From positions 6,138,001 through 6,202,000 of the forward strand of contig CATNEN010000003.1 of the NCBI GenBank assembly GCA_950097015.1: 64,000 nucleotides of DNA. Reading direction: 5' to 3'. The translations under genes and the position numbers were made by a program. Numbering within the stretch: the stretch's first letter is position 1; each line of letters opens with the position of its first letter. This document shows, piece by piece, positions 13,880 through 29,337 of the stretch. Below the pieces are notes generated by a model that saw only the letters and a list, made by a program, of their open reading frames with translations, did no database searches and was not told the origin of the DNA. The DNA is from Macrostomum hystrix (lineage: Eukaryota > Animalia > Platyhelminthes).

Positions 13880-14850
13880 ATTTAAGGATCTGAGTGATTA
13901 TTATCCCCAATTTGAGTGATTGATATTCCCAATTTGAGGATCTGAGTGATTATTATCCCCAATTTGAGTGATTGATATTCCCAATTTGAGGATCTGAGTG
14001 ATTATTATTCCCAATTTGAGGATCTGAGTGATTGATATTCCCAATTTGAGGATCTGAGTGATTGATATTCCCAATTTGAGGATCTGAGTGATTGATATCC
14101 CCAATTTGAGGATCTGGGTGATTGATATCCCCAATTTGAGGATCTGGGTGATTGATATCCCCAATTTGAGGATCTGGGTGATTGATATCCCCAATTTGAG
14201 GATCTGGGTGATTGATATCCCCAATTTGAGGATCTGGGTGATTGATATCCCCAATTTGAGGATCTGAGTGATTGATATCCCCAATTTGAGGATCTGGGTG
14301 ATTGATATCCCCAATTTGAGGATCTGGGTGATTGATATCCCCAATTTGATAATCTGAGTGATTGATATCCCCAATTTGAGGATCTGGGTGATTGATATCC
14401 CCAATTTGAGGATCTGGGTGATTGATATCCCCAATTTGAGGATCTGGGTGATTGATATCCCCAATTTGAGGATCTGAGTGATTGATATCCCCAATTTGAG
14501 GATCTGGGTGATTGATATCCCCAATTTGAGGATCTGGGTGATTGATATCCCCAATTTGAGGATCTGGGTGATTGATATCCCCAATTTGAGGATCTGGGTG
14601 ATTGATATCCCCAATTTGAGGATCTGGGTGATTGATATCCCCATTTTGATAATCTGAGTGATTGATATCCCCAATTTGAGGATCTGGGTGATTGATATCC
14701 CCAATTTGATAATCTGAGTGATTGATATCCCCAATTTGAGGATCTGGGTGATTGATATCCCCATTTTGATAATCTGAGTGATTGATATCCCCAATTTGAG
14801 GATCTGGGTGATTGATATCCACAATTGATGATCTGGGTGACCTGAGGATG
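13880..14850. repeat. 30-bp intergenic minisatellite
   Basis: CCAATTTGAGGATCTGGGTGATTGATATCC tandem array. Confidence 0.95.
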
Positions 14851-15434: not shown

Positions 15435-18147
15435 TCAACGCGGCCGCTTATCAGAAGCCTTCGGCGATTTCGGATACAAAGGCGACCATTGCAGACAGCT
15501 GACATCGATCAACTGGGGCTTTCTAGGCAGAATGCGCAGCAGATGCTCCTGGACTGTACGCTGTGGCAGGCACAGATCATAGCTGCCCCGCCAGTACTGA
15601 AGAAGGCCCAGTCCGTGCAGTGTGTCCTGCACATCGTCTCTAGAGATGGCGGTGGCCGAACAGATGTCTCTGATTGTGCAGCTGCAGTGCGACTGGATGT
15701 ACTGCAGGATGGCGTATTCCCAGTAGCTCCTGCGGATTTCAATTTCAGTGAGTTGAGTGACAGTAGATTGGTAGATTTAGACAGTAGATTAGTAGATTCA
15801 GACAGTAGATAGGTAGATTCAGACAGTAGTTTGGTAGATTCAGACAGTAGATTAGTAGATTCAGACAGTAGATAGGTAGATTCAGACAGTAGATTGGTAG
15901 ATTCAGACAGTAGATAGGTAGATTCAGACAGCAGATTGGTAGATTCAGACAGTAGAGAGGTAGATTCAGACAGTAGATAGGTAGATTCAGACAGTAGATT
16001 GGTAGATTCAGACAGCAGATTGGTAGATTCAGACAGCAGATTGGTAGATTCAGACAGTAGATTGGTAGATTCAGACAGCAGATTGGTAGATTCAGACAGT
16101 AGAGAGGTAGATTTAGACAGTAGATTGGTATACTCAGACAGTAGATTGGTAGATTCAGACAGTAGATTGGTAGATTCATACAGTAGATTGGTAGATTCAG
16201 ACGGTAGATAGGTAGATTCAGACAGTAGATGGGTAGATTCAGACAGTAGATTGGTAGATTCATACAGTAGATTGGTAGATTCAGACAGTAGATTAGACAA
16301 ACCTGTAAGTGACTTTGCCCAGATCGCTAAGCGGTTTCTCGGGTCCGCCAACCAGACCTTCAATTCTGGCCAATTCATAGCTCAGTGAGATGAGCAACTT
16401 GCCGTAACCTTTGCGCTGATGAGGCGGCAGAGTGAGAATGCAGGCTAAATTATTACTATCAGGTGAGTCCTTCTCCTTGCTAAAATAGCCGACAATGTGA
16501 CAGCCGTGTTTGTCAACTTCGCACAGGATGTAGAACAGAAAGCCGGACACATCAAAGTACAAAGTTTTGTGGTCTAGGAAGAGTTTAGCCAGCAGGCACA
16601 AGCATTGGCAATAGAGTTTTCGCTGTTTTCCATCCACTTCAAACACGGACAGATTGGCCTTGCGATAGATCTCTCTGCCAGGTGGCTGCCTGTACTCGCA
16701 CTGAGACAGGTGGTACTTGTAGGACTTCTCTAACCGCATGTACTTTAGGCAGTACTCGCAGATCCACAGTTTGGTCTGCTTGCCGTATTCGTCTGGGTAA
16801 GGGCTAAAGTACCAGGTGGTGATGTCGAACTTGCCCATTTGAATGTGATCGATGTACTTTACCTGGGGACAGCGGGTGAATGGGGTGGCGTTAGAAATCA
16901 GTGAGTACTGGATACTGATAAGCAGAGTGACTATTTAGTGCCTGGCACACTAAATAGAAAAGTGACAATCCGAGTGCCTGGCACTAATTTGTAGAGTGAC
17001 AATCCGAGTGCCTGGCACTAATTGAAAGAGTGACAATCCGAGTGCCTGGCACTAATTGAAAGAGTGACAATCCGAGTGTCAGACCCTAGTTATAAGAGTG
17101 ACAATCCGAGTGTCAGACCCTAGTTATAAGAGTGACAATCCGAGTGCCTGGCACGAATTGAAAGAGTGACAATACGAGTGCCTGGCACTAAATAGAAGAG
17201 TGACAATCCGAGTGCCTGGCACTAATTTGAAGAGTGACAATCCGAGTGCCTGGCACTAATTAGAAGAGTGACAATCCGAGTGCCTGGCACTAATTTGAAG
17301 AGTGACAATCCGAGTGCCTGGCACTAATTTGAAGAGTGACAATCCGAGTGCCTGGCACTAATTTGAAGAGTGACAATCTGAGTGCCTGACACTAATTATA
17401 AGAGTGCCAATCCGAGTGCCTGGCACTAATTAGAAGAGTGACAATCCGAGTGCCTGGCACTAATTAGAAGAGTGACAATCCGAGTGCCTGGCACTAATTT
17501 GAAGAGTGACAATCCGAGTGCCTGGCACTAATTTGAAGAGTGACAATCCGAGTGCCTGGCACTAATTTGAAGAGTGATAATCCGATTGTCAGACAAATCG
17601 AGTGCTAGATACGCACAATAGGAGTGACCTATAATTTCCCCACAGTAACCTTGGTCAGCTCCTGATGCTCTTTCTCCAATGCGGCTGTGGCGGCGTCCAT
17701 CTCTTCAACAGACTGTGGCACATGATGAATCTCGTGATATTTTCTTTTCTGATGCCTGGTTAATCGGGTTTTATCTGATCCGCCGCTAGCAGACAATGGG
17801 TCCAAGCCGGATGTGTCCATAGATGAGGTTTGATGGCTGGTATCAATACGATCCGGTCCAACCCATTCGTCTAGGCGCCTATCAAAGTCGAGATAATGCA
17901 CGAAATATTCTAGCGAATTCGGTACATCTGATTCGCGCCTGTGAACTATTTCAGCCGGATACCAATGGTTGTCTGAGGTTCGCATCACCGGATACCGACT
18001 GCCAACCTCCAATTGGGCCGGTTGTAGGCTAAATGACTTTTGATACTGCTGCTGCTGTGGCTGCTGCGGCGGCAGCGGCGAAGGCGGAACGACAGCTGTG
18101 GCAGCAGGCACAGAAGTCAATGATGAACTCAGTGTTATAGCTGACAT
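15435..18147 (-). CDS. KAT8: Histone acetyltransferase KAT8 / MOF / MYST1
   Basis: Exons 18147-17650, 16862-16303, 15729-15435; chromobarrel [26 protein letters not shown]|[68 protein letters not shown]|SYW. Confidence 0.95.
15760..16295. repeat. 21-bp minisatellite in KAT8 intron 2
   Basis: GACAGTAGATTGGTAGATTCA tandem array. Confidence 0.95.
16925..17590. repeat. 34-bp minisatellite in KAT8 intron 1
   Basis: GAGTGACAATCCGAGTGCCTGGCACTAATTTGAA tandem array. Confidence 0.9.
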
Positions 18148-18252
18148 TCTTTATTAATATTAGTTGCTTATTCAATTTAAAACTGTTTTCATTTGTGTCT
18201 GAAAAACATTGTGATAAAATGTGATGTTGTTTTCTACTTTCAAGCCATATCA

Positions 18253-18750
18253 AACCTACCCAACATCTACCTACCTGGCATGTGTTAACCTACCCAACAT
18301 CTACCTACCTTACATGTGTTAACCTACCCAACATCTACCTACCTGACATGTGTTAACCTACCCAACATCTACCTACCTGGCATGTGTTAACCTACCCAAC
18401 ATCTACCTATCTGACATGTGTTAACCTACCCAACATCTACCTACCTGACATGTGTTAACCTACCCAACATCTACCTACCTGACATGTGTTAACCTACCCA
18501 ACATCTACCTATCTGACATGTGCTAACCTACCCAACATCTGCCTATCTGACATGTGCTAACCTACCCAACATTTACCTACATGACATGTGTTAACCTACC
18601 TAATATCTACCTACCCGGCATGTGGTAACCTACCCAACATATACCTACCTGACATGTGTTAACCTACCCAACATCTACCTACCTGGCATGTGTTAACCTA
18701 CCCAATATCTACCTACCTGACATGTGGTAACCTACCCAACATCTACCCAT
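18253..18750. repeat. 34-bp intergenic minisatellite
   Basis: AACCTACCCAACATCTACCTACCTGACATGTGTT tandem array. Confidence 0.9.
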
Positions 18751-18989
18751 CTAAATTCTGATTTTTACAGAAAAATAAAATAGTATTTACTTCAATAACT
18801 CCAGCGACACAATTTATTTTAGGAAAATCTTTATCTTTATAAATGACAAACCTGGTTCAAAATGCACAAACCGTTTATGCATTAAACAAAAATGCAGCAC
18901 CAGCAGTATCAAAATACAAGGAACTGCGTTACACGATTTTTAAACAAACATTGATTGATTTTTGTAGTTCTTAATTCTGGACCCTAGTC

Positions 18990-19475
18990 AGATTATCAGA
19001 TTTAATCCAGAGGATCTAAAAATATAGAAGGATTATCAGCGTTAATCCTCAGGATCGGGAAGTATAGAAGGATTATCTACTTTTATCCCGAGGATCTAAA
19101 AACATAGAAGGATTATCAGGTTTAATCCTGAGTTTAATCTGGGAATAAAGAAGGATTATCAACTTTAACCCTGGGGATCTGGGATTAAGGAAAGATTATC
19201 AACTTTGATCTGGGAAGATGTATGGATTATCTGCTCCAATCCTCAGGAGCAGGAAATATAGAAGAATTATCTGCTTTAATCCTGAAAAATTGGGAATAAT
19301 GAAGGATTATCTGCTTTAACCCTGGGGATCTGGGATTAAGGAAAGATTATCAACTTTGATCTGGGAAGATGTATGGATTATCTGCTCCAATCCTCAGGAG
19401 CAGGAAATATAGAAGGATTATCTGCTTTAATCCTGAAAAATTGGGAATAATGAAGGATTATCAGGATCTGGGAAA
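18990..19475. repeat. Degenerate ~40-bp repeat with higher-order duplication
   Basis: Recurrent GAAGGATTATC..TTTAATCC..GGATCT; about 150-bp block duplicated (about 19150-19300 / 19300-19460). Confidence 0.7.
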
Positions 19476-19567
19476 TTTACCAAGCCAAGAATGTCGATCT
19501 AAGAAGGAATATCATTTGAAATGATACGAAATGATAAGATTGATTATGCCTTATAATCGTCAAACTT

Positions 19568-22500
19568 TCAACAGGATGTCATTCGCAAACTAGATGACAC
19601 AGGAGTAGAAGACAGTAGATAGTCTCTAGCAGTTAATAATCTAGCAAGAATTTCACCGCTTTCCAAATTGCAACTCGATTCCAGCTTCAATCGATAAACA
19701 GCGCTTGGACTGGTTTCTAAGAAATATTTCTGCCTACTACGTTGATACAATGGATCGTAGTGATCTAGCAATAGGCGGCGAACAAGTTGTTTAACATCGC
19801 CGTTAGCAGCCAGTGAGAGCCAGTTATTCAAAACCGATTGTGTCTGATGTCGGCCAAGCAAATTTAGGCGATTAACTAACAGCTCCGATTGTTGGGCTAG
19901 ACTGCCGTAGCAATTAATCAGGTGTCTAACTCGATCATCAATGTCGGCCACTTCCAATAGAATCCTAGGCGCATCGGAGAGCCTAGCAACCAATGATTGC
20001 GGTAGGTAACGATCCCCTATTCGGGCTGACTCACACTCTAACCAGACGGGTCGCGTTGGGTCAAGTTGGGTCAGGCGAGTGTGCAGAGCAGATTCAAACG
20101 ATTTTTGAGATGGTTGATTGGGCGATTCGGTATCTGCGCCAAGTAGAGAGCCGCGATGATTGGCCAGCGATTCCAGGTCTATCACCTGAGTGTAGGACGA
20201 ATAGGGATTGGTGAATATGGATTCACATTGTCCAGGATTGGTGAATATGGATTCACATTGTCCAGGATTGGTGAATATGGATTCACATTGTCCACAATTG
20301 GTGAATATGGATTTCGATTGTCGAGAGTTGGAGAATATGGATTCACATTGTCGAGAGTTGGTGAATATGGTTCTACGAAACCTAAAATCAGTGAATAATT
20401 TTCTAGGAAACCAAAAATTAGTGAATAAGGTTTAATAAACAACAAGAAATGGTAAATAAGGTTCTACGAAACCTAGAATTTGTGAATAATGTTTAGGAAA
20501 CCTTTAACTGGTGAATAAGGTACTAGGAAACCTATAATTGGTGAATAAGGTACTAGGAAACCGAGAATTGGTGAATAAGGTACTAGGAAACCTATAATTG
20601 GTGAATAAGGTACTAGGAAACCTATAATTGGTGAATAAGGTTCTTGGAAACCTATAATTGGTGAATAAGGTACTAGGAAACCGAGAATTGGTGAATAAGG
20701 TACTAGGAAACCTATAATTGGTGAATAAGGTACTAGGAAACCTAGAATTAGTGAATAATGTTCTAGGAAACCTATAATTGGTGAATAAGGTTCTTGGAAA
20801 CCTAGAATTGGTGAATAATGTTCTAGGAAACCTAGAATTAGTTAATAATGTTCTAGGAAACCTAGAATTAGTGAATAATGTTCTAGGAAACCTAGAATTG
20901 GTGAATAATGTTCTAGGAAACCTAGAATTAGTGAATAATGTTTTAGGAAACCTATAATTGGTGAATAAGGTTCTTGGAAACCTAGAATTGGTGAATAATG
21001 TTCTAGGAAACCTAGAATTAGTGAATAATGTTCTAGGAAACCTATAATTGGTGAATAAGGTTCTTGGAAACCTAGAATTGGTGAATAATGTTCTAGGAAA
21101 CCTAGAATTAGTGAATAATGTTCTAGGAAACCTAGAATTAGTGAATAATGTTCTAGGAAACCTAGAATTGGTGAATAATGTTCTAGGAAACCTATAATTG
21201 GTGAATAATGTTCAAGGAAACCTAGAATTGGTGAATAATGTTCTAGGAAACCTAGAATTGGTGAATAATGTTCTAGGAAACCTAGAATTGGTGAATAATG
21301 TTCTAGGAAACCTAGAATTGGTGAATAAGGTACTAGGAAACCTAGAATTAGTGAATAATGTTCTAGGAAACCTATAATTGGTGAATAAGGTTCTTGGAAA
21401 CCTAGAATTGGTGAATAATGTTCTAGGAAACCTAGAATTAGTGAATAATGTTCTAGGAAACCTAGAATTAGTGAATAATGTTCTAGGAAACCTAGAATTG
21501 GTGAATAATGTTCTAGGAAACCTAGAATTAGTGAATAATGTTTTAGGAAACCTAGAATTAGTGAATAATGTTCTAGGAAACCTAGAATTAGTGAATAATG
21601 TTCTAGGAAACCTATAATTGGTGAATAATGTTCTAGGAAACCTAGAATTGGTGAATAATGTTCTAGGAAACCTAGAATTGGTGAATAATGTTCTAGGAAA
21701 CCTAGAATTGGTGAATAATGTTCTAGGAAACCTAGAATTGGTGAATAAGGTACTAGGAAACCTATAATTGGTGAATAAGGTACTAGGAAACCTAGAATTA
21801 GTGAATAATGTTTAGGAAACCTTTAACTGGTGAATAAGGTACTAGGAAACCTATAATTTGTGAATAAGGTACTAGGAAACCGAGAATTGGTGAATAAGGT
21901 ACTAGGAAACCTAGAATTAGTGAATAATGTTCTAGGAAACCTATAATTGGTGAATAAGGTTCTTGGAAACCTATAATTGGTGAATAAGGTACTAGGAAAC
22001 CTAGAATTAGTGAATAATGTTCTAGGAAACCTATAATTGGTGAATAAGGTTCTTGGAAACCTAGAATTGGTGAATAATGTTCTAGGAAACCTAGAATTGG
22101 TGAATAAGGTTCTTGGAAACCTAGAATTGGTGAATAATGTTCTAGGAAACCTAGAATTAGTGAATAATGTTCTAGGAAACCTAGAATTAGTGAATAATGT
22201 TCTAGGAAACCTAGAATTGGTGAATAATGTTCTAGGAAACCTAGAATTAGTGAATAATGTTTTAGGAAACCTAGAATTAGTGAATAATGTTCTAGGAAAC
22301 CTAGAATTAGTGAATAATGTTCTAGGAAACCTATAATTGGTGAATAATGTTCTAGGAAACCTAGAATTGGTGAATAATGTTCTAGGAAACCTAGAATTGG
22401 TGAATAATGTTCTAGGAAACCTAGAATTGGTGAATAATGTTCTAGGAAACCTAGAATTGGTGAATAAGGTACTAGGAAACCTATAATTGGTGAATAAGGT

Positions 22501-24977
22501 ACTAGGAAACCTAGAATTAGTGAATAATGTTTAGGAAACCTTTAACTGGTGAATAAGGTACTAGGAAACCTATAATTTGTGAATAAGGTACTAGGAAACC
22601 TAGAATTGGTGAATAAGGTACTAGGAAACCTAGAATTAGTGAATAATGTTCTAGGAAACCTATAATTGGTGAATAAGGTTCTTGGAAACCTATAATTGGT
22701 GAATAAGGTACTAGGAAACCTAGAATTAGTGAATAATGTTCTAGGAAACCTATAATTGGTGAATAAGGTTCTTGGAAACCTAGAATTGGTGAATAATGTT
22801 CTAGGAAACCTAGAATTGGTGAATAAGGTTCTTGGAAACCTATAATTGGTGAATAAGGTACTAGGAAACCTAGAATTAGTGAATAATGTTCTAGGAAACC
22901 TATAATTGGTGAATAAGGTACTAGGAAACCTAGAATTGGTGAATAATGTTCTAGGAAACCTAGAATTAGTGAATAATGTTCTAGGAAACCTATAATTAGT
23001 GAATAATGTTCTAGGAAACCTAGAATTGGTGAATAATGTTCTAGGAAACCTAGAATTGGTGAATAATGTTCTAGGAAACCTAGAATTAGTGAATAATGTT
23101 CTAGGAAACCTAGAATTGGTGAATAATGTTCTAGGAAACCTAGAATTGGTGAATAATGTTCTAGGAAACATAGAATTGGTGAATAATGTTCTAGGAAACC
23201 TAGAATTGGTGAATAATGTTCTAGGAAACCTAGAATTGGTGAATAATGTTCTAGTAAACCGAGAATTGGTGAATAATGTTCTAGGAAACCTAGAATTGGT
23301 GAATAATGTTCTAGGAAACCTAGAATTGGTGAATAATGTTCTAGGAAACCGAGAATTGGTGAATAATGTTCTAGGAAACCTAGAATTGGTGAATAATGTT
23401 CTAGGAAACCTAGAATTGGTGAATAATGTTCTAGGAAACCTAGAATTAGTGAACAATGTTCTAGGAAACCTAGAATTGGTGAATAATGTTCTAGGAAACC
23501 TAGAATTGGTGAATAATGTTCTAGGAAACCTAGAATTGGTGAATAATGTTCTAGGAAACATAGAATTTGTGAATTTGGCTTTCGTTGTAAAAAACTGTAT
23601 TTCGTTAGAATTCAGTGAATAGATTTCGAGATAACGCAAATATGTGAATAGATTTTTAACTAAAATTTCGTGAATAGATAACAAAAATAATAATTACAAC
23701 TGAAAAGAACACACACCTGTTCTCCAATTAGAGCCAATCTCTGCAGTAGAAATGTCTTCCCAGATCCTGTCAATCCAGCTAGCACAAGAGCGTGTCTTAG
23801 TTTTCCTGACTTAGCAACTAACCGTTCAGTTTCATTTACAACCAACTGTCTGTAGGCTCGATAACCGCCGGTTAACACAGTGGGCATATAGCCAATCTGA
23901 GACAGAACCGTGGCCAATGAGTAAGATCTTTGACCGCCTCGCCAGCAGTAGATTAGTGGCCTGAGGATTAAGGTTAATCAGATACAAGCTTATAGCATGA
24001 GAACTTATTGGATTGCTAGCCTCACCTGTTAGATACAAACAGAATGGATTGCTAGCCTCACCTGTTAGATCCAAACAGAATGGATTGCTAGCCTAACCTC
24101 TTAAATACAAACAGAATGGATTGCTAGCCTCACCTGTTAGATACAAACAGAATGGATTGCCAGCCTCACCTGTTAGATACAAACAGACTGGATTGCTAGC
24201 CTCACCTGTTAGATACAAACAGACTGGATTGCTAGCCTAACCTCTTAGATACAAACAGAATGGATTGCTAGCCTCACCTCTTAGATAAAAACAGACTGGA
24301 TTGCTAGCCTAACCTCTTAGATACAAACAGAATGGATTGCTAGCCTCACCTCTTAGATACAAACAGATTGGATTGCTAGCCTCACCTCTTAGATCCAAAC
24401 AGAATGGATTGCTAGCCTCACCTCTTAGATACAAACAGAATGGATTGCTAGCCTCACCTCTTAGATACAAACAGAATGGATTGCTAGCCTCACCTGTTAG
24501 ATCCAAACAGAATGGATTGCTAGCCTCACCTGTTAGATCCAAACAGAATGGATCTTATCTACTTGAAAATATTTAATAATTTAATGAAGTGGGTTTTAAC
24601 CCTTACCTATAATCCGCCTCCTTATTAGCAAAGTGACTTTTTAAAAGTTCCCCGATTCGTTGCGCAATCACCGATGCGCCCAATCGTCTGCCGTCGAACG
24701 GAGATTCTGAAAATTTACGCCCAACAACCTGACGATCAACATCGCCAAGTAGGGCCAGATTGATAGCCGTAGGCAGGTGATCTTCAGTAAATTCAGCCGG
24801 TGTTCTGACGTCAATAACTTCGTGATAAGCGGCAAAGTTCATAGGATTGACTTCCGCGTGAATAAGACCAGTTGCTTTTGTCGTTCCATTTGTTCGTCTG
24901 TTGCTTCTGAGAGAAGTGCAGACAGCTCTAGCGAGTTGGCGACTAGATGTCGCTAAATTTAAGCAAAAACGACAATT
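19568..24977 (-). CDS. selU: tRNA 2-selenouridine synthase (SelU/MnmH/YbbB)-like protein with putative mitochondrial presequence
   Basis: Exons 24977-24607, 23960-23717, 20185-19568 join in frame (410 codons plus stop). Rhodanese domain IDVRTPAEFTEDHLPTAINL and YCWRGGQRS, GGYRAYR, P-loop GLTGSGKT, QVIDLESLANHRGSLLG, QPSQKSFES, VWLECESARIG, HYDPLY. First genomic ATG is at 24842 but the frame is open back to the acceptor at 24978. Confidence 0.9.
20205..23575. repeat. 3.4-kb 30-bp minisatellite in selU intron 2
   Basis: GTGAATAATGTTCTAGGAAACCTAGAATTG array, preceded by a related GTGAATATGGATTCACATTGTCCAGGATTG variant. Confidence 0.95.
24005..24552. repeat. 42-bp minisatellite in selU intron 1
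   Basis: TGGATTGCTAGCCTCACCTGTTAGATACAAACAGAA-based array. Confidence 0.9.
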
Positions 24978-25049
24978 CTGAAATTTAATTTTTTATTAAC
25001 GGTAATAATTTGAGGACTTTAAAATTTAATAGGTGAGATTTTGAAAGAC

Positions 25050-25770
25050 AAAGGTCGCAATACTAGGAGTGAGATTTTGAAGCTAAAAAACTAGGGGTGA
25101 GATTTTGAAGCTAAAATACTAGGCGTGAGATTTTGAAGCTAAAATACTAGGGGTGAGATTTTGAAGCTAAAAAACTAGGGGTGAGATTTTGAAGCTAAAA
25201 AACTAGGGGTGAGATTTTGAAGCTAAAATACTAGGCGTGAGATTTTGAAGCTAAAATACTAGGGGTGAGATTTTGAAGCTAAATTACTAGGGGTGAGATT
25301 TTGAAGCTAAAATACTAGGGGTGAGATTTTGAAGCTAAATTACTAGGGGTGAGATTTTGAAGCTAAATTACTAGGGGTGAGATTTTGAAGCTAAAATACT
25401 AGGGGTGAGATTTTGAAGTTAAATTACTAGGGGTGAGATTTTGAAGCTAAAATACTAGGGGTGAGATTTTGAAGCTAAATTACTAGGGGTGAGATTTTGA
25501 AGCTAAAATACTAGGGGTGAGATTTTGAAGCTAAAATACTAGGCGTGAGATTTTGAAGCTAAAATACTAGGGGTGAGATTTTGAAGCTAAATTACTAGGG
25601 GTGAGATTTTGAAGCTAAATTACTAGGGGTGAGATTTTGAAGCTAAAATACTAGGGGTGAGATTTTGAAGCTAAAATACTAGGGGTGAGATTTTGAATCT
25701 AAAAAACTAGGGGTGAGATTTTGAAGCTAAAATACTAGGGGTGAGATTTTGAGGCTGCAATACTAGGGGT
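25050..25770. repeat. 28-bp intergenic minisatellite between YIPF1 and selU
   Basis: CTAGGGGTGAGATTTTGAAGCTAAAATA tandem array. Confidence 0.95.
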
Positions 25771-26395
25771 TTGATACTTAGACCAGAATACAAGGATTGA
25801 GATTTTGAAGCTTACAGGGGTAAGAGTTTGAGACTAAGCAATTAAGGATACAATTTTAAGATAAAAACTGAAAGAAAATAAAAAGACGAATAATTATTTG
25901 CCACATGCCCATGAATATTATCTTAAAAGTCTTCCATAGCGTTTTTTCATGCAAGTTTTGTAATACTTAAAGTACAATATAATAGTAATTTAATAGAACA
26001 TACTCTTTTGTTAGTTTGGCAACTCAACTAATGTCTACAAAATATATCTAGATAGCTTTGTGTAAGTGAATGTAGCATGTTATTTCTAATTGTATTTTAC
26101 AATAAGTTATTTGCAGTAACTTGCACCACTATCAATAGCTTTTATTTATGCTATCACCGAAAAAGCAACGATTTAAAATTAACGGATTTACCAATTCGAT
26201 AGAATAAGGTAAATCCGGTTAGTTACAGTGAACTTGAAATTGCACACAAATGAAAACTTCAAGATATATAGACTTAACAATGTTCATAATGTATTTGAAT
26301 CACGCAAAATTGTTTATCCTAAAAAGAAAGTCATGAAAAAAGCAGAAATAATGTAATTTACTGGATAAACAATCTCGTTACATGAAACTGTCTGC

Positions 26396-29337
26396 CTATT
26401 TAGTCGAAGCAGGGGCTTTCACCGAGCCAGTTGAAGAACCAGACGGTTTCAGAGTTGTAGCCAATGGCAACAATGTTGAACCTGGAGCTGTAGAACCACC
26501 GCCACTGCTGCTGACGTGGAAGAAGTAGAGCTGGAAAATAATTGCGAGGCTCAACTAAATCTGGCACCCATTTAACAGTTGGGGGAACTGAGTTATGCAA
26601 AATTAGATTCTTGTAATAACGGGAATAAATGATCCATAGAGTGGTTCTTGCTAAAGGGCTATAGTAACAGAAACTGTTGTGAAGTCTGGAATCGAACCCC
26701 CGACCTTTAAGTCGAAGATTCTGAAGCTCTAACCACAATCTAGGTTACAAATCACTTTAAAATGAACACACAGTTATCATCATAGGAGTTGATCGAAAAA
26801 GTTTTTATCAAAACTTTTTATCATAGAGGAATTGTGGAATCAATATTTGTATTACAAATGTACAAATAGGCATAGTTACTCCCACCCTTGGGGAGTCCGT
26901 GGCAGAGCGGTTACCGCGTTTCCCTCTCGCGCCAGGATCCCTGAGCTCGATTCCGAGGCGAGGCCATATTAATTTGGGGCGCAGCCGCGGAGAGAAGGCT
27001 TTGGGGGCTTGCCATGCAATTTACACTCTTGAGTGCCAACCTCCAAGGCACTATCTATCTATTTGCAGGGGGCCCGGGGCACTTGTCGCACAAGCGACGG
27101 AGCGGCACGCCCCCAGACCGGCGAACTAGGCGCTTTAGCGCCCATCGCGCCGCCTCCCCTGAGCAGGCACCACACACAGCAGCACAGACCAGCCGGGGAG
27201 GGCAGGAGGCACCCAGAATAGGCAGCAGTGTCCCCCACCCCCGCCCCACACGCACAGAGCAGACCAAGCCGGGGCGGAAGGCTGATAAGAAATCAGTCCT
27301 CAGGGGGAGCCGGGTGATGAGTGTACACTTATCCAATCGCGCTGACGGAAGTCCAGAAAGCGCGCGGCGGTGTACACCTGCCCTCCAGCCACCCCCCGCA
27401 AGGTCTCACGCCCCAGCGCCAACGCACACAACTCACACAACGCAGAACAGGCACACAGAAGGTAGGAGCGAAGCTATTATTTCAAGCTTTGATTGCACGA
27501 AATATGGTGCACCTCCGCCGGTCGCTACTGTCCAAACCCCCCAAGTCCCGAAATTAATCGTGACTTGAAGGGTGAATCGAACTAGCGTCCATTGGAGTGC
27601 GAGGCAGCGACGTTAGCCGCTGACCCACTCGCCCCAACCTCCAAGGCACAGTGAGTGTACACTGCCTGACGATGAGAAAGTCAGGGCAGATGTACACACC
27701 TGTGTAAGCGTGTGCCTGCGTACAGTATCTGTGTGCGTGTGTGCTCAGGAGTCAGCGGAATGGGCTGAATTGCATCCTCGCTGGCTGCGGGTCTAATGTT
27801 ATTTTAACCGTTTTACCAAAAAACCTGCAGGTTAAACAAACCTTAAATCCGACAGCCAGTAAAGCGTGCAACAGCATAGCAACCGTTAATAGACCAATAG
27901 CTGTTCGCCGTTCACCAGAAGACACGCTGGGCCATAGAGCTAAAGCTAGCACAATGCCAGATAGAACTAGAGCCAATAGGATTAGAATCCATTGAAGAAT
28001 GGCTAATTGTATAACGCACAATATAGCCACAGGAATATAGATAGACAATGAATAGCCGTACAGGCACAGCAGCTCCAGGTAGGCATATTTCTCAGGCAAT
28101 TGTCGCCACCAGGCTACAGCCCACAATAGCAGTGGTACTAGCCACCAATACAGATAGATTGCTGTAGCGGCGAATGTAACTTTGCGAAAATCGTACACCC
28201 AGATATAATCTCCACCGGATGCGGATGTTTGAAAGTAATCGGCCAAATTGCCGGCGATAGCTGTTGTAAATATAAGCGTAGTGCAAATCCAGAATGGGCC
28301 GTATAGATCTGGCGAATGGCGAATATCGTCCGCTACTAGGTTGCGACCTGGGCGTGGCACGAACGAGCTGAGAATACGTTTGCCAACCTGCGAGCATGGT
28401 TAGTATGGGATAATTCAAGTTGGATACTTTTAAGGTAGGGTAGAGAGCGTGATGGGAAACACGAGAGGGCGAAAGAGGGAGGAAGAGAAAGGGAAGGAGA
28501 GAGAATAAAATGGGGAAGGAGCGGATGAAGAGTGAAGGCAGAGAGGGAGAGAGTGAAGGGAGAGAATGAAGGGAGGGGGGAGTGAATAGAGGCAGTGGTT
28601 GGAAAAAAACTGAGAACTATCATGTGTGAATGAAGTTTTGAATGTGTCAGGGAGAATGTAGAGGTAGAGAACTTACAAGATTACTGATAATAAACTATCC
28701 AACTACTATTATGTTAGTATATAGTCGCAAAAACTAACCTGATTAGTATCAACATTGAAGAATCTTTGATAATAGGCCATAGACAGTACGCTAGGCTTTT
28801 TCTCTGGTTCACCGTCTGCACCATCGGAACCATCTTGACGACTGCCACCCTCGCGCAATAGCTGGGCTTGATCGCTGGAGCGTCCACTACTATCATACTG
28901 AACTTCGTCATCCTCTTCACCTTCGCCAAGACCAATAGAGGTGTCCCTAGCTGGGAAGTCTTTGTGCGGACTGTTTAAGTCAACTTTGGTGTATTCAATG
29001 TCTGGCGGGTAAATGAAGGAATTGGATATGAAGGCACACAATCACACAGGTTTGTACATCTGTTTTGACCTTCACTCTAGAATCATGCTTAAGGACTTTA
29101 ACAAACTCTACCATGCAAAATGTAGCTAAAGTTTCCATTAAATAAATCTCAATCTAAGCCTCCATCTTGGTAATGTTCTTGGTAATAATCTTCACTATTG
29201 TCTATCTTATATGTCTTGACTATAATGACTTTTACTATAAAAACTATATAGTGACCCCATTCATTATTAGAGAATTTTGTAACAAATTTCTTACAAAAAG
29301 TTTGCAAAATTAACTTACCTCTGAAATTTCTTGCCAT
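26396..29337 (-). CDS. YIPF1: Protein YIPF1 (Yip1 domain family)
   Basis: Exons 29337-29319, 29001-28739, 28387-27842, 26530-26396 join in frame; YYQRFFNVDT.QV..RIL.S..P, PDLYGPFWICTTLIF...IAGNL, DFRKV..AA..IY.Y, ELLCLYGYSL.IYIP, LHALLAVGFK|LYFF. Confidence 0.92.
26545..26742 (-). mobile_element. tRNA-derived SINE (CORE-like) in YIPF1 last intron
   Basis: Minus strand GTGGTTAGAGC...GGGTTCGATTCC...CTCAGTTCCCCCAACTGTTAAATGGGTGCCAG. Confidence 0.55.
26890..27795 (+). mobile_element. SINE family A split by a nested antisense SINE
   Basis: 26890-27051 plus 27634-27795 reconstitute the 7682 element. Confidence 0.8.
27052..27633 (-). mobile_element. Nested tRNA-derived SINE (family C)
   Basis: Minus strand starts GGCGAGTGGGTCAGCGG...GTTCGATTC and ends in an (ATAG)n tail; flanked by TSD CCAACCTCCAAGGCAC (27036-27051 / 27634-27649). 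Confidence 0.8.

What the first reader, a model, noticed from the sequence alone, without database searches (positions are those of the whole stretch)
19568..24977. Intron-containing SelU/MnmH (tRNA 2-selenouridine/geranyl synthase) in an animal genome
Seen: three GT-AG exons splice in frame into a complete rhodanese + P-loop protein with the SelU hallmarks (DVR.P.EF..DH.P.A.N, YCWRGG.RS, G.TGSGKT, DLE.LANHRGS, QPSQK.FE, E.ES.RIG, YDPLY). The gene lies between animal YIPF1 and KAT8, and its introns carry the same kind of minisatellites as neighbouring host genes, so contamination is very unlikely. Established: SelU/YbbB converts s2U34 of tRNA-Lys/Glu/Gln to ges2U and se2U using geranyl-PP and selenophosphate, and is characterised as a bacterial/archaeal pathway. 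Inference: this lineage may selenate or geranylate wobble uridines, a selenium-utilisation trait not considered part of the standard animal repertoire, acquired by old HGT or retained patchily.
Basis: partly seen in the sequence, partly recalled or inferred. Interest (0 to 1): 0.9.

Follow-up and report, generated by a model that had tools for sequence, protein, structure and literature searches.

The report
Flatworm nuclear gene for tRNA selenouridine synthase
The free-living flatworm Macrostomum hystrix has an expressed, intron-containing nuclear copy of SelU, the bacterial enzyme that puts selenium (or a geranyl group) on tRNA wobble uridines; its start codon appears to come from the trans-spliced leader, ahead of a presequence-like extension, so this tRNA selenium trait may exist in an animal, possibly in its mitochondria.

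Summary
On the minus strand, three GT-AG exons (24977/24842-24607, 23960-23717, 20185-19568) encode a complete SelU/MnmH. They match consecutive parts of the NCBIfam equivalog NF008752 and keep the catalytic Cys (CWRGGQRS), the Gly67 equivalent and the Walker A motif (GLTGSGKT).

The assembly's size and contig count match Macrostomum hystrix. The gene is single-copy, lies between a Yip1 gene and a KAT8-like MYST gene, and has host-like GC. Spliced contigs from two studies show both introns removed as predicted.

New here:
- The mRNA is trans-spliced at 24978/24977 to the Macrostomum spliced leader.
- The leader's terminal ATG is in frame with 45 open codons upstream of Met-24842. These codons are basic, Ser/Thr-rich and have one acidic residue.
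- The M. lignano orthologue (420 aa, 382 bits on NF008752) has no methionine at all, so the leader AUG must be its start.

The genome also encodes a Sec-containing SPS2 and MTU1/MnmA. The nearest relatives are bacterial (43-49% identity). A separate, undescribed eukaryote-type SelU clade (a choanoflagellate and algae) also carries long basic N-terminal extensions.

Best reading: an old bacterial-type SelU, domesticated and probably sent to mitochondria. Activity and location are untested. I found no paper describing a eukaryotic SelU.

The parts
24978..24979 (-). AG of the spliced-leader trans-splice acceptor (…aaatttcAG|AATTGTCG)
   Evidence: RNA-derived contigs of X1 and X4 align up to 24978. 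They then carry 22 unaligned bases. Together with the ambiguous G, these equal the last 23 nt of the Macrostomum SL.
24843..24977 (-). Forty-five open codons in frame with the SL's terminal ATG and with the SelU frame: a presequence-like N-terminal extension (7 R/K, 1 D/E, 10 S/T)
   Evidence: Translation and composition. The M. lignano orthologue has a comparable 53-aa extension and no Met anywhere.
24839..24889 (-). Out-of-frame ATG (aaATGg) opening a 16-codon uORF whose TGA overlaps ATG 24842 (ATGA)
   Evidence: Sequence. It lies between the SL AUG and Met-24842, which argues against Met-24842 as the main scanning start.
24607..24842 (-). Conserved part of exon 1: start of the rhodanese domain (DVRTPAEF…), the SelU-specific insertion and the Gly67 equivalent
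   Evidence: NF008752 positions 16-91, 74 bits; alignment to E. coli SelU.
23961..24606 (-). Intron 1 (GT..AG, phase 2) holding a 36-bp x 15 minisatellite (24009-24553)
   Evidence: A joint skipping 646 bases appears in contigs of X1, X4 and X6. Tandem repeats from TRF.
23717..23960 (-). Exon 2: catalytic Cys motif YCWRGGQRS and Walker A GLTGSGKT
   Evidence: NF008752 positions 93-169, 93 bits; alignment; covered by RNA contigs.
20186..23716 (-). Intron 2 (GT..AG, phase 0) holding a 30-bp x 107 minisatellite (20354-23574)
   Evidence: The loose end below 23714 in X1, X4 and X6 equals the reverse complement of the first bases of exon 3. Tandem repeats from TRF.
19568..20185 (-). Exon 3: rest of the P-loop/AAA_SelU domain and the C-terminal helical part (DLESLANHRGS, QPSQKSFE, ECESARIG, HYDPLY); stop TGA at 19570-19568
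   Evidence: NF008752 positions 171-336, 164 bits. 63% identical to M. lignano P0001.
19417..19567 (-). 3' UTR (about 150 nt).
   Evidence: X1 contig of 1407 nt, of which 766 nt lie 3' of exon 2.

Best explanation
This is a domesticated bacterial-type SelU/MnmH gene in the nuclear genome of the flatworm Macrostomum hystrix.

Shown:
- It is single-copy and sits between ordinary animal genes.
- It has two spliceosomal introns, which are removed as predicted.
- Its mRNA is trans-spliced to the Macrostomum spliced leader.
- Residues conserved in bacterial SelU are retained in two deeply divergent Macrostomum species.

Inferred:
- Translation starts at the AUG that ends the spliced leader. This gives a protein of about 411 aa whose first ~46 residues form a fast-evolving, basic, hydroxylated presequence.
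- The mature enzyme is imported into mitochondria. There it acts on MTU1-made 2-thiouridine at the wobble position of mt-tRNAs (Glu, Gln and possibly Lys).
- As in E. coli, it would first S-geranylate with geranyl-PP, bound at the Walker A site. It would then replace geranyl-S with selenium from selenophosphate, using the rhodanese Cys. The worm's own Sec-containing SPS2 would supply the selenophosphate.
For: Family membership: the exons hit consecutive parts of equivalog NF008752. The M. lignano orthologue scores 382 bits against a cut-off of 266. Cys97, Gly67 and Walker A Lys155 equivalents are conserved (their roles are described in PMC4830565). Of 74 columns conserved at 90% or more in bacteria, 66 are kept in M. 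hystrix; M. lignano keeps 68 of 75.

Host gene: only one locus is found in the 220-Mb assembly. It is flanked by Yip1 and MYST genes. GC is 0.47 and GC3 0.40, like the neighbours. The assembly's size and contig count are those published for M. hystrix.

Expression and splicing: contigs from studies P1 and P2 lack both introns.

SL and start codon:
- The 5' loose end equals the last 23 nt of the published SL.
- The SL RNA gene with a GTAAG donor is present elsewhere in the genome and absent from the window.
- The SL ATG is in frame with 45 open codons.
- The M. lignano protein has no Met and is annotated as partial.
- Flatworm SL AUGs can serve as initiators (Cheng et al. 2006, cited in PMC12582326).

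Presequence character: the extension has 7 R/K against 1 D/E. It is only 29% identical between the two species, against 64-69% for the mature part. In the Atlas model of the orthologue, residues 45-399 superpose on bacterial SelU. The other eukaryote-type SelUs also carry long basic N-terminal extensions.

Pathway partners: SPS2 with an in-frame TGA at ...LKG*GCKVPQ and MTU1/MnmA.
Against: - No enzyme assay and no nucleoside data exist.
- No targeting predictor was available, so 'mitochondrial' rests on composition and analogy.
- SPS2 is normally cytosolic, and no route for selenophosphate (or geranyl-PP) into mitochondria is known.
- M. hystrix, unlike M. lignano, has an internal Met (24842) that could give a cytosolic form.
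- The long stem branch (1.42 changes per site) could reflect a change of function.
- No dN/dS could be computed, because no M. lignano DNA was reachable.
- In rhabditophoran flatworm mitochondria AAA is read as Asn (established knowledge), so tRNA-Lys may not be a substrate.
Confidence: 0.6

Rival explanations
1. Same enzyme, different compartment. It works in the cytosol on the mcm5s2U wobble uridines of cytosolic tRNA-Lys/Glu/Gln, next to cytosolic SPS2. The N-terminal extension would then be a linker or another signal, or be skipped in M. hystrix by initiation at Met-24842.
For: SPS2, the selenophosphate source, is cytosolic in animals (established knowledge). M. hystrix has Met-24842, preceded by a uORF whose stop overlaps it, which could allow re-initiation. 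E. coli SelU tolerates different C5 substituents (PMC9105526; PMC4830565). Old reports list mnm5se2U among eukaryotic modifications (PMC7694415).
Against: M. lignano has no internal Met, so the extension is obligatory there. The extension has presequence-like composition in both species. The other eukaryote-type SelUs also carry long basic extensions.
Confidence: 0.2
2. The protein has changed function. It keeps the rhodanese and P-loop folds but now only geranylates, or serves another sulfur/selenium-transfer or RNA-binding role rather than making se2U.
For: The stem branch is long. Eight bacterial near-invariant positions are changed in M. hystrix, seven of them also changed in M. lignano. 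In MnmH, geranylation and selenation can be separated genetically.
Against: The catalytic Cys, which is needed only for selenation, is kept, as are Walker A and 66 of 74 conserved positions. SPS2 is present. The orthologue passes three equivalog cut-offs.
Confidence: 0.12
3. Artefact or dead gene: bacterial contamination, a mis-assembly, or a transcribed pseudogene.
For: The family is otherwise bacterial and archaeal in the literature.
Against: The gene has spliceosomal introns filled with host-type minisatellites and SL trans-splicing. It lies in a long contig between animal genes. Its frame is intact, and an orthologue exists in M. lignano on three scaffolds. Functional residues are conserved.
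Confidence: 0.02

Closest known systems
[quoted passage not shown]
   Same: Rhodanese domain with the SelU-specific insertion, catalytic Cys in C-x-x-G, the Gly67 equivalent, a P-loop domain with Walker A GxxGSGKT, the C-terminal HYDP motif, and about the same mature length.
   Different: Only ~30% identical to E. coli SelU. Nuclear gene with two introns, SL trans-spliced, start codon apparently from the SL, with an N-terminal extension of ~46 aa. The host is an animal.
Nearest bacterial SelUs (Caulobacterales, Rhodobacterales, Burkholderiales/Rhodocyclales, Nostocales and other cyanobacteria)
   Same: 43-49% identity over the whole mature protein, and the same equivalog model NF008752.
   Different: No single donor group is indicated. 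Macrostomum sits on a long stem in an unresolved fork with cyanobacteria, planctomycetes, an alphaproteobacterial MAG and the Verrucomicrobia + eukaryote-type group.
M. lignano 'Rhodanese domain-containing protein' (UniRef A0A1I8J182; NCBI PAA63748.1 and others, hypothetical, partial)
   Same: Orthologue: 64-69% identity in the mature part, the same architecture and a basic N-terminal extension.
   Different: No Met anywhere in its 420 residues. Its extension is only 29% identical. It carries no functional annotation and I found no paper on it.
Eukaryote-type SelU clade (Diaphanoeca grandis, Diacronema lutheri, Cymbomonas tetramitiformis and many marine environmental proteins of 420-540 aa)
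   Same: Full SelU by NF008752 (373-391 bits), with long net-basic N-terminal extensions.
   Different: A separate well-supported clade (99*) next to Verrucomicrobia. Its Walker A variant is GSAKG, where Macrostomum has GSGKT. A common origin with Macrostomum is neither shown nor rejected (AU p = 0.33).
Archaeal split SelU (Methanococcales, two adjacent genes)
   Same: The same two domains are required together (PMC4830565).
   Different: The Macrostomum protein is a single chain and scores far below cut-off on the archaeal models TIGR04568 and TIGR04569.

Membership tests
SelU/MnmH tRNA 2-selenouridine(34) synthase (NCBIfam NF008752 / TIGR03167; Pfam PF00581 + PF26341) | Whole-protein score above the curated equivalog cut-off | tested here: met
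   The M. lignano orthologue P0001 scores 382.3 bits (cut-off 266) on NF008752, 307 (219.75) on TIGR03167 and 280 (241) on NF008750. The M. hystrix exons were scored apart: 74 + 93 + 164 bits on consecutive profile parts. The joined M. hystrix model was deliberately not scored.
SelU/MnmH | Rhodanese domain with the catalytic Cys (E. coli C97, C-x-x-G), required for selenation | tested here: met
   YCWRGGQRS in exon 2 aligns with E. coli CCARGGQRS. The residue's role is from PMC4830565.
SelU/MnmH | SelU-specific insertion of ~33-36 aa in the rhodanese domain, including Gly67 | tested here: met
   Exon 1 aligns through this region with only a one-residue gap, and LG(ASVI) lies at the position of E. 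coli LG67(HKLV).
SelU/MnmH | P-loop domain with an intact Walker A (G-x4-GKT, K155), required for geranylation | tested here: met
   GLTGSGKT in exon 2. PF26341 AAA_SelU is precomputed on the orthologue.
SelU/MnmH | A selenophosphate synthetase (SelD/SPS2) in the same genome | tested here: met
   One SelD locus on C1, with an in-frame TGA at the Sec position ...LKG*GCKVPQ.
SelU/MnmH | A source of the substrate: an MnmA-type 2-thiouridylase making s2U34 | tested here: met
   MTU1/MnmA homologue at C37, 266 bits, above the cut-off. The tRNAs themselves were not examined, because the mitochondrial genome is not in the assembly.
SelU/MnmH | Catalysis of s2U -> ges2U -> se2U on tRNA | not testable with these tools
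   Needs nucleoside LC-MS, 75Se labelling or complementation.
Mitochondrial matrix proteins with a cleavable presequence | N-terminal basic, hydroxylated, acid-poor extension outside the conserved fold | tested here: inconclusive
   The composition fits in both species, and the fold starts at about residue 45 of the orthologue. No predictor or localisation data were available.

The most novel reading that the evidence does not exclude
An animal uses selenium in tRNA. Macrostomum would import a bacterial-type SelU into its mitochondria, translated from an AUG that exists only after spliced-leader trans-splicing, and convert wobble 2-thiouridines of mt-tRNAs to 2-seleno (or S-geranyl) uridines. 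Together with the presequence-bearing SelUs of a choanoflagellate and several algae, this would make the selenouridine trait an overlooked organellar trait of eukaryotes. It would also name an enzyme for the old, unexplained reports of selenium-containing tRNA in eukaryotes.
Probability: 0.4. Interest if true: 0.8.

Novelty: new member of a known kind. Interest (0 to 1): 0.66.

Why it matters
Comparative-genomic papers on selenium use tie the selenouridine marker ybbB to prokaryotes. Reviews nevertheless list mnm5se2U as present in eukaryotes, with no enzyme named.

An intact, expressed, conserved SelU in a metazoan gives a concrete candidate enzyme. A Sec-SPS2 and MTU1 are encoded in the same genome. 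The genus has laboratory tools: RNAi and transgenesis in M. lignano (my own knowledge, not checked here).

It is also a clean case of an open reading frame that depends on the spliced leader for its start codon, and of a bacterial-type gene that has acquired introns, trans-splicing and a probable targeting peptide.

Tried and rejected
Ideas rejected:
- Contamination or mis-assembly is rejected by the introns, the SL, the animal neighbours and the orthologue in M. lignano.
- An upstream cis exon as the source of the 5' end is rejected. The 23 nt equal the published SL, have 43 genomic copies (some in arrays with an ~11.6-kb period), and do not occur in the window.
- The TGA inside the MTU1 match is just the exon end, not a Sec codon.

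Steps that could not be run or were limited:
The part 23600-25058 was laid instead, so exon 3 and the 3' end were seen only as a loose end and through contig length.
- Run X9 (a related organism, holding 21% of the exon-3 words) laid nothing on exons 1-2 at 88% likeness.
M. lignano DNA, its intron positions, synteny and dN/dS could therefore not be examined.

Searches that found nothing further:
- The exon-3 searches found no protein of intermediate identity other than M. lignano. These blanks are limited by length windows and database content.
- The AU test does not decide between an independent transfer and a common origin with the other eukaryote clade (p = 0.33).
- No full-length SelU structure exists in the PDB.
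- Seven paper searches found no description of a eukaryotic SelU. The library lacks most subscription journals.

Handling of the spliced model:
- No joined M. hystrix coding sequence or protein was searched, folded or placed in the tree.
- Exon 3 alone and the database protein P0001 stood in for it.
- In script 59 the exon translations were concatenated only to count residue composition.
Full report
**Observation**

The region holds a three-exon gene on the minus strand.
- Exon 1 runs from 24977 to 24607, with an in-frame ATG at 24842.
- Exon 2 runs from 23960 to 23717.
- Exon 3 runs from 20185 to 19568, ending in the TGA stop (19570-19568).
- Both introns begin with GT and end with AG, and the phases fit: 236 + 244 nt = 160 codons, followed by 205 codons.

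Scored separately, the three exon translations match consecutive, non-overlapping parts of the NCBIfam equivalog NF008752 (tRNA 2-selenouridine(34) synthase MnmH). They cover positions 16-91, 93-169 and 171-336 of 357, at 74, 93 and 164 bits. Pfam detects the rhodanese domain in exon 1. The full-length database orthologue stood in for it.

**Organism and setting**

The window is contig 3, positions 6,138,001-6,202,000, of an assembly of 220,453,370 bases in 42 contigs. These are exactly the figures published for Macrostomum hystrix, a free-living flatworm (PMC10468722).

The SelU family matches only this one locus in the genome. The neighbours on the same strand are:
- a KAT8-like MYST acetyltransferase (Tudor-knot, zf-MYST and MOZ_SAS domains; 16296-18147);
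- a Yip1-domain gene (27755-28360).

Minisatellites with units of 21-40 bp fill both SelU introns (36 bp x 15 and 30 bp x 107 copies), the KAT8 intron and the intergenic DNA. The exons have 47% GC and 40% GC3, similar to the neighbouring genes.

**Expression and splicing**

- Contigs of runs X1 and X4 (study P1) and X6 (study P2) skip 23960|24607 exactly.
- Below exon 2 they continue with letters that are the reverse complement of the first bases of exon 3. A three-base GTG ambiguity at this junction is resolved by the GT-AG rule.

Both introns are therefore removed as predicted, in two independent studies. The assembly holds no intron-less copy.

**The 5' end**

The X1 and X4 contigs stop matching the genome at 24978 and then carry 22 further bases. 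Together with the ambiguous G, these read GCGAAGACTCAATTTATTGCATG in the sense direction. This is the 3' part of the 35-nt spliced leader published for M. lignano (PMC8629364).
- The sequence occurs 43 times in the genome at up to one mismatch (29 exact copies), some in tandem arrays. None is in the window.
- One copy read in full shows the whole leader followed by a GTAAG donor.
- The genomic site is a good acceptor (aaatttcAG|AATTGTCG).

The mRNA is therefore SL trans-spliced.

**The start codon**

All flatworm leaders end in AUG, which can act as an initiator (Cheng et al. 2006, as cited in PMC12582326). Several observations point to the leader AUG as the start here.
- The leader ATG is in frame with 45 open codons (24977-24843) that run straight into Met-24842 and the SelU domain.
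- About 16% of random 45-codon frames in this window are open. The splice phase must also be right, so chance would give this roughly one time in twenty.
- Between the leader AUG and Met-24842 lies an out-of-frame ATG in a strong context (aaATGg). Its 16-codon frame ends in a TGA that overlaps ATG 24842. Under scanning, Met-24842 is thus a poor primary start.
- The M. lignano orthologue is decisive. UniRef A0A1I8J182 (420 aa) and three NCBI entries marked 'partial' contain no methionine at all. They have Leu where M. hystrix has Met-24842. In that species the reading frame can only be opened by an AUG that is not in the gene, which the leader supplies.

**The extension**

- The M. hystrix extension has 7 Arg/Lys, 1 Asp/Glu and 10 Ser/Thr in 45 residues. 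The M. lignano extension has 6, 1 and 10 in 53 residues.
- The two extensions are 29% identical (not significant). The mature parts are 64-69% identical.
- In the Atlas model of the orthologue, residues 45-399 superpose on a bacterial SelU model.

This is the pattern of a cleavable organellar presequence. No targeting predictor was available, so the compartment remains an inference.

**Is it a working SelU?**

Aligned with E. coli SelU, the flatworm protein keeps:
- the rhodanese catalytic Cys (YCWRGGQRS against CCARGGQRS), which is required for selenation;
- the SelU-specific insertion, with the Gly67 equivalent;
- the Walker A motif (GLTGSGKT), whose lysine is required for geranylation (roles from PMC4830565).

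Of the alignment columns conserved at 90% or more among 29 bacterial SelUs, M. hystrix keeps 66 of 74 and M. lignano 68 of 75. Overall identity to those bacteria is only 37-45%. The M. lignano protein passes the curated cut-offs of three MnmH equivalog models (382 against 266 bits on NF008752).

**Pathway partners**

- The genome encodes one selenophosphate synthetase. Its upstream exon reads ...DLKG*GCKVPQ... with an in-frame TGA at the selenocysteine position, so it is a Sec-SPS2.
- It also encodes MTU1/MnmA, the 2-thiouridylase that makes the SelU substrate.

**Origin**

The best matches outside Macrostomum are bacterial SelUs at 43-49% identity: Caulobacterales, Rhodobacterales, Burkholderiales/Rhodocyclales and cyanobacteria.

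One unexpected hit, from the choanoflagellate Diaphanoeca grandis in EukProt, led to a second group.
- It includes Diacronema lutheri, Cymbomonas tetramitiformis and many marine environmental proteins of 420-540 aa.
- These proteins pass the same equivalog cut-off.
- They have a median of 89 residues before the DVR motif, against 21 in bacteria. Their extensions are net basic.

In a tree of 87 sequences (quick IQ-TREE search), the two M. lignano rows and M. hystrix exon 3 form a 100%-supported clade on a long stem of 1.42 changes per site. That clade sits in an unresolved fork with cyanobacteria, planctomycetes, an alphaproteobacterial MAG and a Verrucomicrobia + eukaryote-type group. The eukaryote-type clade itself has 99% support. 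Forcing Macrostomum together with that clade costs 6.5 log-likelihood units and is not rejected (AU p = 0.33). Neither an independent old transfer into the Macrostomum lineage nor a shared, patchily retained eukaryotic gene can be excluded. No other animal sequence of intermediate identity was found, but those searches have known blind spots.

**Mechanism proposed**

Shown: the gene, its splicing, the leader, residue conservation, and the presence of SPS2 and MTU1.

Inferred:
- The leader AUG opens a frame of about 411 codons.
- The presequence directs the protein to mitochondria.
- There, as in E. coli, the P-loop domain binds geranyl-PP and geranylates the sulfur of wobble s2U.
- The rhodanese Cys then mediates replacement by selenium from selenophosphate.

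Open problems:
- how selenophosphate and geranyl-PP would reach the matrix;
- whether M. hystrix also makes a cytosolic form from Met-24842;
- which mt-tRNAs qualify, since AAA is read as Asn in rhabditophoran mitochondria (established knowledge).

**Comparison with the literature, and verdict**

Comparative-genomic papers on selenium use tie the ybbB/SelU marker to prokaryotes. A review lists mnm5se2U as occurring in eukaryotes but names no enzyme. Seven full-text searches found no description of a eukaryotic SelU. The M. lignano orthologue has sat in public databases as a 'Rhodanese domain-containing' or 'hypothetical' protein.

The finding is a true member of a well-known enzyme family in an unexpected host, with two added features: the leader-supplied start codon and the probable organellar targeting. 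I rate it as a new member of a known kind. Interest is fairly high because it makes the question of selenium in animal tRNA directly testable.

Noticed in passing
G000:C1 about 6246016 (L096 nt ~6017), later exons C1:6247895-6249063: The only selenophosphate synthetase gene of the genome has an in-frame TGA at the selenocysteine position (...DLKG*GCKVPQAVL...), so it is a Sec-containing SPS2.
   Followed up: partly
G000 contigs C15, C17, C42 (e.g. C17:2765, 14410, 26055, 37700): Spliced-leader sequences recur with a period of about 11.6 kb, suggesting that SL RNA genes sit inside a larger tandem unit. Single copies are scattered on other contigs. One copy (L004:1489-1528) shows the full 35-nt SL followed by GTAAG.
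   Followed up: partly
window 24839-24889 (-): An out-of-frame ATG in a strong context opens a 16-codon uORF whose stop overlaps ATG 24842 (ATGA). This could allow termination-reinitiation and a shorter, extension-less SelU isoform in M. hystrix.
   Followed up: no
proteins P0132, P0321, P0329, P0314-P0338: An uncharacterised eukaryote-type SelU clade: Diaphanoeca grandis, Diacronema lutheri, Cymbomonas tetramitiformis and abundant marine environmental proteins. They carry long basic N-terminal extensions and a GSAKG Walker A variant.
   Followed up: partly
window 13904-14824 (-) and 15512-16378 (-): Long ORFs hit Pfam 'Decapeptide repeat', Tox-URI2 and 'Grass antifreeze beta roll'. The second ORF lies on the 21-bp minisatellite (15759-16294). 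Both hits are probably translations of tandem repeats rather than genes.
   Followed up: no
window 15759-25812: Unusually dense minisatellites with units of 21, 28, 30, 34, 36 and 40 bp, in arrays of up to 107 copies (3.2 kb). They lie in introns and between genes, each array with its own unit.
   Followed up: no
run X9 (organism B): A run of a different organism holds 21% of the 31-mers of exon 3, which implies a SelU orthologue of roughly 95% identity in a close relative of M. hystrix. Nothing from it laid on exons 1-2 at 88% likeness.
   Followed up: partly
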